64,000 bases of DNA, taken from NCBI RefSeq assembly GCF_002571385.2, contig NW_019218070.1, forward strand, positions 1 to 64,000. Reading direction: 5' to 3'. The notes below the pieces were generated by a model that had not been told where the DNA came from, did no database searches, and saw only the letters and a list, made by a program, of their open reading frames with translations. Every line of letters begins with the position of its first letter. Position 1 is the stretch's first letter. Positions 19,201 to 22,200 of the stretch are shown in pieces. The translations under genes were made by a program, and so were the position numbers. Origin of the DNA: Stylophora pistillata (Eukaryota).

Positions 19201-22200
19201 ATGATCTGTACTCTTTTACCTCTAATGATACGACAAGCTCATGTGTGTCGTCACTCAAAATTGCTCTGGCTATCGCATCTCTTACTCCCCGGTACAACTC
19301 TCCATACACCAAGAACCTATCCAGATTCATCTCTGTGTCCTGTTTTGGTATTGTTATAAGTAAATTCAGGAATGTCTCCTTTAGTATTTTTCGCTTTTAA
19401 AAGGATAGAATAGTTATGATAAAGGAAGTAGAGTATGGGGCCAGTCAAGAGCATTTCGTTCAAACGTGGACAAGTAGGCTTGTACTGCAGTAGGTCGCAG
19501 TACTCAGTAGGGCATTGTCACGAATGAATTATGGGTATCTTGTGGGAAAGCAAACAACATAACTTGTCAACATTTTCATTCATTTAACGCAGTATGAGGG
19601 AGATTCATAAACCTACGATATGTATGTATCTGGAACATCAGAAACTGACATAAGAATAAAACACCCTACCTCTCTCCGCGAGAGTTCTACGGGTACGATC
19701 CAAGCGAGCTCTGGGTTTTGCGACACTGTAGAAATTGCGTGTCCCCCGTAACGTTTGACCAGCTGTTTGAGCAGAAAGAGAGCAGGGGAACTAAAATGAA
19801 CCGACGTGCACAATGCCTGAACAGTCTTCAAGAGGAATTCCATTGCTCCAAGCGTGTCATCTCGGTGCCACTTTTCGTCACCGCTAACACAACTCAAATA
19901 AATAAACTGCGCAGCCCAACTTAGACTGGAGCGTGCTTTCGCTATCGCCTCTAGTGATTTAACCTCAATCTCATCATCACTGGTGGTAAGGTCTTTCTGT
20001 AAGATTTCAAGTGCATCTTGACAAAACCTATTGACGGTACCAATTTGCAAGTGGAGATCGAGGCTGACACCTGTGGCGAACGTCCTGTCACAGGAGTTCT
20101 GTGGGTTAAGAAGGCAGTTGAAAAAGATTTAGGGGTACACAGTAAGAACTAAAAAACATTTAATAATGGTTTTAATATTTTTTTGGATATTTGAAAAAAA
20201 AAAGGAAAGTAGTCGTCATTAAGTTATAACGCACTGTAACCTAGCTGTACCAAGTTACGGACAAGTTCGTGCTCCTGAAAAAGAGCTTCATCATTACACT
20301 GTAACGTGTTCTTTGAAACAAGGACAGATTTTCAGGTACCTCCATACACTGCACGGCAAGCAGGCAGACATTCAGGAGATGAGGCACTTCTGATGGCAGA
20401 CCTTGAGCTTCGAAGAGGAAACGTTCGAGGTGGCTCTTGACTAATTTACCACTAAAGGAATATCACAGAAAACATTGATTTTTGAAGATGTGTTCTGAAA
20501 GGAACTCTGTTCAAAAGAAGAATAGCAAGGACGCCAAAAATCTGACCCAAGGTGAACATTAACATTTGTAAGTGATTCGAATGAGTAGTTCATTGTTCTC
20601 GTGGAATGCAGCTGCTATTGAAAAGAAAAAAACACTCCTTGGCGAAAAGGTCAATTTCTTTTCTAGAATCGCATGGAAGTTTCAACCAACCAAAGCAAAG
20701 AAGGTTAAAATATATGATAGTAATGATGAACGCAAAAATGCCACCGGCTGTAGAGGACTATTTTGATCTCTAACTCGTAATGCCAATGGCCAATACAGCC
20801 TATGGCGGCCGACCTATAATGATCAGATCTAATAAGTTTTATTGCTACTTTTAAGTTAATGGTGATCGCTAACTTGGAGAGTCTTGAAGCGTATCGCATT
20901 GCACTGGTTAAATAAACCAACTTACATGAGTCAAAACTAAACAATAGATACTTGTATTTCTGGTACGGGCCAGATCGAAGGCTGGTTTCAGGTAGAAGCT
21001 GTTAATTAGAGAGATACACACCTGGAATTGAGGAGTTGTTGCAAGAGGAATGATCTCTCAACAGGACTGCTGTCTGTTCCAAATTCAGGGAAAAGCGAGA
21101 ATTCTCTCGTTTCAAAGGTAGATTGTGTCCCTGTAACATATCTCATAAGCATTTCAAATACGTCTGCATCCAAATTATGCACGTCGTCCCCAAGGCAAAA
21201 CACTTTAATGATCTCCATCAAGAATGCGTTGCAACTTCGAAGGAACTTTGCAAACACTTTAGGGTCGTCACTTTGAATAAAAGCAGTATCATCGAACCTC
21301 CATTAGACGGTTACACAGTACCAATGGCCGAAAAGCAATACTGGGGAATCGAGATTCATCATAGGGTACAGATGTCGTCATCATGTTGAAACACCTTAAT
21401 CGATTCAATTTCCTTTAAGCTTTCCTTATATCGACTTTTTCTTATTCCTCTCTAGTAAAAACAGCGAGTGTCAAGCCAAGAGACTGAATCCATCATAAAT
21501 CCATTTTTATTATGATAATCCTACTTAAGTAATTTCTTGTAACTTTTGAAGGGGGTCGGCGGGTGGGGAAGGTACTTAAAGAACCATCTAGCGGCGAAAA
21601 TTTTTCTCAAGTTGACACCCATGGGGTGTCCGCTCCTTCTCCAAATATTCATTCCAACAACGTGTAATGTCCACGAGCAACTGTTTTAGAGAGACCCAGG
21701 GGTAAATGTGAAAAAAATTTGAGAGATATGTCTTTTGATCAACCTCTGTATTAACAGTGCAGCCTTTTAGCTCAATCCTCCCCCTGAATTTTTCCTGACC
21801 TACGGCAACCATAACCTTATCGGCTGTAGACGCTATCTGTTTGGTTTACCAGAGACAAGACAAACCATGAACCAGGGACAAGCAAACAACATTCATTATA
21901 AGCAAATTTACTTAACTGCCACCGAAAGGAAAGCTAGCGACTTACTCTTGCAGTCGTTGTTTTACATCCTCTTTACAGCTATGCAAAACTCGTTCCAGAA
22001 TAGTGAGGGACTTGGCCTTTGTGAAATCTGTTCCATCAGCTAGAGCCTATAAAATTATTGAGGCCTTAATTCATACTAAATATCTTTATAGTTATTAAAA
22101 TAAAATATTTAAAAGTTATAGTAAATTGTTCTAACAGACTTCCAGAGCTGAACAACAGACAAATCGGAAACTATTACATTATAATTGAAAAACGAAACTG

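What the first reader, a model, noticed from the sequence alone, without database searches (positions are those of the whole stretch)
21022..22046. Naturally RING-less RNF213 with an intact RZ catalytic finger and intact ATPases
Seen: exon 21946-22046 ends ...VLHSCKEDVKQRLQ(GA) in phase 2 and joins exon 21022-21270 (T GAC GAC CCT AAA...), giving CKEDVKQRLQDDDPKVFAKFLRSCNAFLMEII. I found no intact RING exon in the 675-bp intron. Established: in vertebrate RNF213 the RING lies exactly between the homologous 'CKE' helix and the 'F..CN.FF.' helix. Vertebrate RNF213 ubiquitylates LPS through the RZ finger, with the RING dispensable. Here the RZ ligands, the catalytic Cys/His and both active Walker A/B pairs are intact. 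Inference: a functional RZ-only RNF213 paralogue, a natural equivalent of engineered delta-RING constructs and a candidate cell-autonomous immune sensor in an invertebrate.
Basis: partly seen in the sequence, partly recalled or inferred. Interest (0 to 1): 0.8.

Follow-up and report, generated by a model that had tools for sequence, protein, structure and literature searches.

The report
Coral RNF213 genes without a RING
This coral (Stylophora pistillata) gene is an expressed relative of the human immune and moyamoya-disease ubiquitin ligase RNF213 that has lost exactly its RING-finger exon but kept its ATPase motors and its second (RZ) catalytic finger, and most of its sister genes in the same genome have done the same.

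Summary
Exon 21946-22046 (minus strand) splices directly to exon 21022-21270. The junction (skips 675 bases, GT..AG) appears in assembled RNA contigs of three runs and in raw stranded reads of a fourth. Three runs show no coverage in the intron.

The gene runs colinear with full-length RNF213 from about 63.4 kb to 7.7 kb of the window. It keeps:
- both Walker A/B pairs;
- a complete RZ finger (CHCC zinc ligands plus the Cys/His dyad).

No RING motif occurs anywhere in the window.

This is not a single odd paralogue.
- The genome holds about 13 RNF213 genes, and only two carry the RING exon.
- That exon is a phase 2-2 cassette lying exactly between the two exons in question.
- RING-less NCBI gene models also exist for Acropora and Montipora.
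- Full-length trees place the window gene beside the RING-bearing coral lineage. This suggests two independent losses (AU p = 0.036, post hoc).
- dN/dS against the nearest RING-less paralogues is about 0.24.
- Polymorphism shows only weak constraint (pN/pS about 0.66, not significant).

Catalytic activity and any immune role remain inferences. I found no paper describing RING-less RNF213, and the field calls the RING "evolutionarily conserved". I class it as a new variant of a known kind, of moderate to high interest.

The parts
7730..63400 (-). RNF213-like gene. Approximate span; the 5' and 3' ends are not mapped by RNA. It contains an N run at 26026-26176.
   Evidence: 48 colinear stop-free tblastn blocks to Oculina RNF213-like P0256, residues 360-5266. 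Colinear with fish RNF213 P0148 residues 1465-5052.
23240..23356 (-). Exon upstream of exon A, ending ...DVQHVLKLWK. The start coordinate is approximate.
   Evidence: The loose-end consensus of reads and contigs at 22048 maps to 23242-23271. tblastn block 23356-23240.
21946..22046 (-). Exon A (ALADGTDF...CKEDVKQRLQ), phase-2 end. It is the helix before the RING position.
   Evidence: Homologous exon found in 10 paralogues.
21271..21945 (-). 675-bp intron where the RING exon lies in RING-bearing paralogues. No RING exon and no supported relic.
   Evidence: GT..AG joint in 4 RNA runs. No Cys-rich ORF, no Pfam hit, single copy. Best similarity to the RING exon peptide scores 35 against a shuffle mean of 27.9 (SD 4.1), p about 0.08. 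The claimed fossil at 21271-21453 scores 22.
21022..21270 (-). Exon B (DDPKVFAKFLRSCNAFLMEII...SFLLQQLLNS), the E3-module helix directly after the RING position.
   Evidence: The profile of 12 paralogous copies matches mouse RNF213 chain residues 4009-4090 and human 4099-4180 at E 1e-9.
20340..20451 (-). Next E3-module exon.
   Evidence: RNA joints 20451->21022 and 20098->20340.
19669..20098 (-). E3-module exon (143 aa).
   Evidence: RNA joints. tblastn to P0139 and P0256.
19219..19338 (-). E3-module exon.
   Evidence: RNA joint 19338->19669. The loose end at 19219 maps to 18832-18861.
17257..17349 (-). RZ finger, first half: ...LECGKGHPYFVGD. Holds the Zn ligands Cys and His. Exon limits come from splice signals, not from RNA.
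   Evidence: Sequence. Pfam PF20173 positions 12-24, 14.5 bits.
16906..17009 (-). RZ finger, second half: CGRPNQQRDCPYCDSSVPIGGLKHH. Holds the catalytic Cys, two Zn Cys and the His of the dyad.
   Evidence: Sequence. Pfam PF20173 positions 25-53, 30 bits, above the cut-off of 27.
40258..40281 (-). AAA3 Walker A, GETGCGKT.
   Evidence: The exon 40177-40458 matches mouse RNF213 at E 1.7e-25 with an identical IMGETGCGKTRLI.
39110..39343 (-). Exon with the AAA3 Walker B (ILFFDEAN).
   Evidence: 45-67% identity to fish, nemertean and coral RNF213.
36035..36058 (-). AAA4 Walker A, GKPGSSKS.
   Evidence: The exon 35957-36184 is 64-80% identical to RNF213 of fish, amphioxus and coral.
35375..35746 (-). 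Exon with the AAA4 Walker B (VVVLDEVGLAE).
   Evidence: tblastn E 1e-36 to 1e-44.

Best explanation
The window holds an expressed, full-length paralogue of the giant AAA+/E3 ligase RNF213 in the coral Stylophora pistillata. Its RING-finger exon has been removed cleanly.

In the two RING-bearing paralogues of the same genome the RING is a single exon in phase 2-2, lying between the homologues of exons A and B. Its loss therefore leaves the reading frame intact.

The protein keeps the two active ATPase sites (AAA3 and AAA4), the E3 shell, the C-terminal domain and a complete RZ finger. It most likely works the way mammalian RNF213 does without its RING:
- ATP binding to the AAA core switches on the ligase.
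- An E2~ubiquitin docks on the C-terminal domain.
- Ubiquitin is passed to the RZ-finger cysteine (transthiolation) and from there to the substrate.

Shown here: gene structure, splicing, expression, motif integrity, family-wide RING loss, and dN/dS below 1. Inferred: catalytic activity, substrate, and a role in cell-autonomous immunity.
For: - Splice junction in 4 RNA runs with an empty intron.
- RNF213 identity.
- Walker A/B of AAA3 and AAA4 intact.
- RZ finger split over two exons, matching Pfam PF20173 positions 12-24 and 25-53. The spacing C-x3-H-x6-C-x8-C-x2-C follows that of human C4505/H4509/C4516/C4525/C4528. His-His follows 10-11 residues after the last Cys, against 9 in human (residue roles from PMC11549300 and bioRxiv 10.1101/2021.05.10.443411).
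- A bona fide RING exon (zf-RING_2, E 3e-12) sits between the homologous exons in L010 and L012, in phase 2-2.
- Only 2 RNF213-type RING exons against about 13 AAA3 exons in the genome.
- The RZ finger is kept in both RING-less clades.
- dN/dS 0.23-0.25 against the two closest RING-less paralogues, over about 330 codons.
- In mammals, RING deletion leaves auto-ubiquitylation and bacterial ubiquitylation intact, and the E2 docks on the CTD (PMC11549300; bioRxiv 10.1101/2021.05.10.443411).
Against: - There is no biochemical or genetic test of this protein.
- Differences between RNA contigs and the reference in the E3 region give 16 non-synonymous: 7 synonymous (pN/pS 0.66, binomial p 0.24). Recent constraint is therefore weak or absent there.
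- The window gene sits on a long branch (0.83, against 0.43 for its RING-bearing relative).
- dS of 0.8-0.9 is near saturation.
- The full ORF was checked only block by block. An N run (26026-26176) lies inside the gene, and RNA was laid on only 3.3 kb.
Confidence: 0.7

Rival explanations
1. A decaying paralogue. After duplication and RING loss the gene is drifting towards a pseudogene. It is still transcribed and spliced but no longer under selection for ligase activity.
For: pN/pS of about 0.66 is not significantly below 1. The terminal branch is long. The family is large and partly tandem, so redundancy is plausible.
Against: 48 colinear blocks are free of stops. All Walker and RZ catalytic residues are intact. 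dN/dS is about 0.24 since the split from its RING-less sisters. Correctly spliced poly(A) RNA is seen in several independent studies.
Confidence: 0.12
2. The protein is functional but has changed role. Without the RING it has lost a RING-specific output and acts as a modulator or partner of the RING-bearing paralogues, or on a different substrate class, rather than as an equivalent of vertebrate RNF213.
For: In mammals the isolated RING is active in vitro, and deleting it partly impairs ubiquitylation of the Toxoplasma vacuole (PMC11549300). Two RING-bearing genes are retained beside about 11 RING-less ones, which suggests a division of labour.
Against: No data show hetero-oligomers. The RZ and AAA sites needed for autonomous activity are all present.
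Confidence: 0.13
3. The RING is not really absent. It is encoded elsewhere, either in another exon or an alternative isoform, or hidden in the N run.
For: An N run lies inside the gene (26026-26176). Some database RING-less models are artefacts: the old Branchiostoma model P0035 lacks a RING that 96%-identical newer models contain.
Against: There is no RING pattern in any frame of the window. The junction is direct in all four RNA runs with no alternative joint. The N run lies 4 kb upstream of the homologous RING position. Nine further paralogues have introns of only about 230-270 bp at this place.
Confidence: 0.03

Closest known systems
Vertebrate RNF213 (mysterin), mouse and human; PDB 6TAX, 7OIK, 8S24
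   Same: Same overall architecture, colinear over about 3,600 residues. This covers the dynein-like AAA core with identical AAA3 Walker A, the AAA4 Walker A/B, the E3 shell, an RZ finger with CHCC ligands and the Cys/His dyad, and the C-terminal domain.
   Different: There is no RING domain. Exon A joins exon B where the vertebrate RING (human 3997-4035, from my own knowledge) lies. Exon B aligns from about 24 residues after it.
Engineered RNF213 delta-RING and H4014N alleles (PMC11549300; bioRxiv 10.1101/2021.05.10.443411)
   Same: The same domain is missing while the RZ finger and AAA sites are intact. Those alleles still auto-ubiquitylate and still ubiquitylate Salmonella and Listeria.
   Different: This form is natural, expressed and old: it is shared by three paralogues separated by dS of about 0.85. 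Its activity is untested.
RING-bearing RNF213 paralogues of the same coral (C61:~820 kb and ~900 kb) and Oculina patagonica P0256
   Same: Nearest full-length relative of the window gene in the tree (SH-aLRT 99 and 94). Same exon A and exon B phases.
   Different: They keep the 62-aa phase 2-2 RING exon.
RING-less 'rnf213-alpha-like' NCBI models of Stylophora, Acropora and Montipora (P0216, P0228-P0230, P0234, P0244, P0263, P0264, P0270)
   Same: Same direct exon A-exon B join. The precomputed Pfam lists show RZ and AAA but no RING. The RZ finger is kept.
   Different: They form a separate clade (support 100), probably from an independent and older loss that predates the split of robust and complex corals.
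ZNFX1
   Same: Shares the RZ-type finger, which is used as a ligase site.
   Different: ZNFX1 is an SF1 helicase without the six-AAA dynein-like core. The window gene is not of that architecture. A ZNFX1-like single-exon RZ finger lies elsewhere in the genome (L028).

Membership tests
RNF213 (mysterin) family | Dynein-like AAA core with Walker A and B in AAA3 and AAA4 | tested here: met
   GETGCGKT / ILFFDEAN and GKPGSSKS / VVLDEVGLAE. The AAA3 exon matches mouse RNF213 at E 1.7e-25. AAA blocks are 45-90% identical to fish RNF213.
RNF213 (mysterin) family | E3 module (shell) homologous to that of RNF213 | tested here: met
   The exon B profile hits only RNF213 chains in the PDB, E 9e-10 to 4e-9.
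RNF213 (mysterin) family | RING (C3HC4) domain inserted in the E3 module | tested here: not met
   Direct exon A-exon B splice in RNA. No RING pattern in the window. No Pfam RING in the intron ORFs, whereas the paralogue's exon scores zf-RING_2 at 3e-12.
RNF213 (mysterin) family | RZ finger with CHCC zinc ligands plus the catalytic Cys and His | tested here: met
   ECGKGHPYFVGD|CGRPNQQRDCPYCDSSVPIGGLKHH. Pfam PF20173 positions 12-24 (14.5 bits) and 25-53 (30 bits) on the two exons. The joined domain was not scanned.
RNF213 (mysterin) family | C-terminal domain (E2 docking site) | tested here: met
   Colinear tblastn blocks to fish RNF213 residues 4811-5052 (E down to 2e-13) and to Oculina residues 4669-5266.
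RNF213 (mysterin) family | E3 activity by E2-to-RZ transthiolation, switched on by ATP binding | not testable with these tools
   Needs protein biochemistry.
RING-type E3 ligases | Cross-brace C3HC4 or C3H2C3 zinc-binding domain | tested here: not met

The most novel reading that the evidence does not exclude
The RING of RNF213 has been discarded repeatedly and cleanly, as a symmetric cassette exon, in independent coral lineages and possibly also in amphioxus and crinoids. Meanwhile the RZ finger and both ATPase sites stay conserved, and the RING-less genes expand to outnumber RING-bearing ones about five to one. This would be natural evidence that the RZ/AAA machine is the ancestral, self-sufficient core of this ligase class. 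It would also mean the 'evolutionarily conserved' RING serves a separable task, with coral RING-less paralogues forming a diversified family of cytosolic immune sensors.
Probability: 0.35. Interest if true: 0.75.

Novelty: new variant of a known kind. Interest (0 to 1): 0.58.

Why it matters
RNF213 is the main moyamoya-disease gene and a cell-autonomous immune ligase.

Its RING gave it its name and is a hotspot of patient mutations. Yet no bona fide RING substrate is known (PMC11549300), and the enzymologists who found the RZ active site state they cannot explain the 'evolutionarily conserved' RING (bioRxiv 10.1101/2021.05.10.443411).

Natural, expressed RING-less RNF213 genes sit beside RING-bearing sisters in one genome. 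This gives a ready-made comparative system to ask what the RING adds, which surfaces co-vary with it, and whether RZ-only enzymes ubiquitylate LPS or other microbial molecules.

It also matters for annotation. In corals, 'E3 ubiquitin-protein ligase rnf213-alpha-like' mostly denotes proteins without a RING.

Tried and rejected
- **Single-exon searches against the PDB.** phmmer of exon B alone and of the second RZ exon alone found nothing. Only the 12-copy profile reached RNF213.
Its best score against the paralogue's RING peptide is 22, below the shuffle mean of 27.9. The best match in the whole intron (CWNEYLEKERTPHGC against CVSNWIERERTCPYC, within 21588-21812) has p of about 0.08. Neither has a Pfam hit. 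With dS saturated, no relic is expected, so I rejected it as unsupported.
- **E3-region tree (340 columns).** It left the three coral clades unresolved (support 49-59), and the careful search did not finish in time. I replaced it with full-length trees.
- **The big representative search.** It returned mostly exon-sized fragments, and no full-length model of this very gene was found.
- **The old Branchiostoma model P0035.** It looked like a RING-less full-length protein, but newer 96%-identical models carry the RING, so I treat it as a model artefact.
- **Literature searches.** They found no description of RING-less RNF213. This is absence in the held library only.
- **Joined spliced protein.** Exons were searched one by one by reference. 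Exon pieces were concatenated only inside local scripts, for trees and codon counts. The joined RZ domain and the joined whole protein were therefore not scanned or folded.

Full report
**Observation**

On the minus strand, exon A (21946-22046) ends ...CAA GA followed by GTAAGT. Exon B (21022-21270) starts after ...tcaaag with T GAC GAC CCT.

Public RNA runs of the same species hold 26-39% of the sampled words of 19100-23000. That is about the exonic share of the stretch.

I laid four runs on 19100-22400.
- The joint 21270->21946 (skips 675, GT..AG on the minus strand) is present in one contig each of X1, X10 and X13.
- It is also present in three raw reads with two distinct starts of the stranded run X24. 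All X24 first mates lie on +, which fits a minus-strand RNA.
- The intron has zero depth in X10, X13 and X24. X1 has one contig of depth 3.8 at 21494-21770, read as unspliced RNA or DNA.
- The neighbouring joints are seen as well. The upstream exon ends at 23240 with ...DVQHVLKLWK.

The intron has no Cys-rich ORF, no Pfam hit and no second copy in the genome. No C3HC4-like pattern exists in any frame of the 64-kb window.

**What the gene is**

A profile of exon B from 12 paralogous copies (alignment A1) matches only RNF213 chains in the PDB (E about 1e-9). The match covers chain residues 4009-4090 of mouse 7OIK and 4099-4180 of human 8S24, directly behind the RING.

The exon carrying the AAA3 Walker A matches mouse RNF213 at E 1.7e-25, with an identical IMGETGCGKTRLI.

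tblastn with fish, amphioxus, nemertean and coral RNF213 gives colinear, stop-free blocks. With Oculina P0256 the blocks run from about 61.2 kb to 7.7 kb: 48 blocks, about 3,980 aligned residues, P0256 residues 360-5266.

The catalytic motifs are all present.
- Walker A/B of AAA3: GETGCGKT and ILFFDEAN.
- Walker A/B of AAA4: GKPGSSKS and VVVLDEVGLAE.
- The RZ finger is split over two exons, 17257-17349 and 16906-17009. It reads ECGKGHPYFVGD|CGRPNQQRDCPYCDSSVPIGGLKHH.
- The two halves match Pfam PF20173 at positions 12-24 and 25-53. The second half alone scores above the gathering cut-off.
- The spacing of the first five conserved residues equals that of human C4505, H4509, C4516, C4525 and C4528. 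A His-His pair follows at the place of H4537.
- The roles of these residues (CHCC zinc site, Cys nucleophile, His general base) are taken from PMC11549300 and bioRxiv 10.1101/2021.05.10.443411.

**Context in the genome**

The contig lengths of NCBI proteins returned equal those of contigs C407, C255, C634 and C465. The genome is therefore Stylophora pistillata.

Exon B has 12 copies in the genome and the AAA3 exon about 13. Only two RNF213-type RING exons exist, both on contig C61.

In those two genes (L010, L012) the RING is one 62-codon exon. It scores zf-RING_2 at E 3e-12. It lies between the homologues of exons A and B, entered and left in phase 2. Removing it keeps the frame, which is exactly what the window gene and nine other paralogues show. 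Those nine have introns of only 230-270 bp at that place.

The RZ finger is intact in the two closest RING-less paralogues (L025, L026). It is also intact in the RING-bearing gene L027 and in members of the other RING-less clade (CSKPMEKSTCPDCGRVIGGENH).

**Spread and history**

I examined 120 long RNF213 proteins at the exon B boundary.
- 93 have a RING or a RING variant: vertebrates, molluscs, nemerteans, hemichordates and the coral Oculina.
- True direct joins occur in NCBI models of Stylophora, Acropora palmata, A. muricata and Montipora capricornis.
- Direct joins also occur in one Branchiostoma model, one crinoid model and two frog models.
- At least one RING-less model is a prediction artefact. 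P0035 lacks a RING that 96%-identical newer models contain. The non-coral cases therefore need RNA checks.

Full-length trees (about 4,070 columns, LG+G4, quick search) put the window gene beside the RING-bearing Oculina protein. SH-aLRT is 99, and 94 when the window pieces are picked with a clade-2 query to avoid selection bias. The Stylophora+Acropora+Montipora RING-less clade stands apart with support 100.

Holding all coral RING-less genes together costs 14.1 log-likelihood units (AU p = 0.036). This suggests two independent losses. I rate it as suggestive only, for three reasons: the group was named after seeing the tree, the window branch is long, and no mixture model was used. The shorter E3-only tree was unresolved.

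**Selection**

Against its two nearest RING-less paralogues, the five RNA-confirmed exons (about 330 codons) give the following:

| Measure | Value |
|---|---|
| dN | 0.21 |
| dS | 0.81-0.90 |
| dN/dS | 0.23-0.25 |

This indicates purifying selection after the loss, although dS is close to saturation.

Differences between RNA contigs of other samples and the reference in the same exons are 16 non-synonymous to 7 synonymous. That gives pN/pS 0.66, which is not significantly below neutral (p = 0.24). Recent constraint on this poorly conserved shell region is weak. That fits either relaxation or the diversifying pattern common in immune families.

**Mechanism**

The following is known for mammals:
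- ATP binding to the AAA core activates the ligase.
- UBE2L3~Ub docks on the C-terminal domain.
- Ubiquitin goes to the RZ cysteine.
- Deleting the RING leaves auto-ubiquitylation and ubiquitylation of Salmonella and Listeria unchanged.

These points come from PMC11549300, PMC12075652 and bioRxiv 10.1101/2021.05.10.443411. All elements needed for that route are present here, so the same route is the most likely mode of action. This is an inference.

An immune role is also an inference. It rests on analogy and on the induction of an RNF213 homologue in poly(I:C)-activated Nematostella immune cells (PMC13319465). Expansion of RNF213 in symbiotic bivalves has been noted (PMC9993606), but without domain analysis.

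**Novelty**

In the held library I found no paper describing RING-less RNF213. The mechanistic papers call the RING evolutionarily conserved and unexplained.

The RING-less proteins are, however, already visible as NCBI predictions whose Pfam lists lack a RING. So the sequences are public but their meaning is undescribed. I class this as a new variant of a known kind.

**Limits**

- The rest of the gene model rests on homology blocks and splice signals.
- An N run (26026-26176) lies inside the gene and was left alone.
Exons were searched singly by reference, and pieces were concatenated only in local scripts for trees and codon counts.

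Noticed in passing
window:21588-21812 (-): An intron ORF contains CWNEYLEKERTPHGC, which aligns with the C-terminal part of the paralogues' RING (CVSNWIERERTCPYC). The score is 35 against a shuffle mean of 27.9 (SD 4.1), p about 0.08, and there is no Pfam hit. A low-depth contig of run X1 (21494-21770) overlaps it. 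It is not significant, but it is the only RING-like trace in the intron. It lies outside the 'fossil' stretch proposed in note s1-777880.
   Followed up: partly
G000:C286:84-131 kb (L003, L014, L025) and C634:111-142 kb (L002, L013, L026): These are the two closest RING-less paralogues, about 70% protein identity in the E3 region. One lies about 68 kb downstream on the same contig as the window gene, which points to tandem duplication after the RING loss.
   Followed up: partly
P0241, P0250 (frogs), P0165 (Branchiostoma), P0176 (Antedon); These predicted RNF213 proteins of other phyla skip the RING at the same boundary. In Pyxicephalus a RING-bearing model of the same species also exists. The cause could be cassette-exon skipping, assembly gaps or true losses. 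This was not checked with RNA.
   Followed up: no
molluscan RNF213 models, (for example P0175, P0183, P0197): Many bivalve and gastropod RNF213 proteins have Asp, or another residue, where the RING's His ligand should be (…LPCKDxxC…). They also lack RING hits in the precomputed Pfam lists. The RING may be degenerate there rather than deleted.
   Followed up: no
window:22469-22891 and 5744-6001: Intronic and flanking ORF fragments share motifs (…ACTGFEP…, …MGSNPV…), which suggests copies of a short interspersed repeat.
   Followed up: no
window:8210-8420: A CA/TG-type microsatellite, read in frame as HTHTHIHVHAHAHAH…, lies just upstream of the last mapped exons.
   Followed up: no
window:19100-19248: Contigs of X1, X10 and X13 run continuously across the splice site at 19219, at depth 9-29 against 42-68 for the spliced form. 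This indicates retained intron or unspliced RNA.
   Followed up: no
G000:C283:21889-21984 (L028): A single-exon RZ finger (WYKCPQGHIYVITECGGPMQKSTCPDCGSVIGGENH) lies outside the RNF213 family. It is probably the coral ZNFX1 homologue.
   Followed up: no
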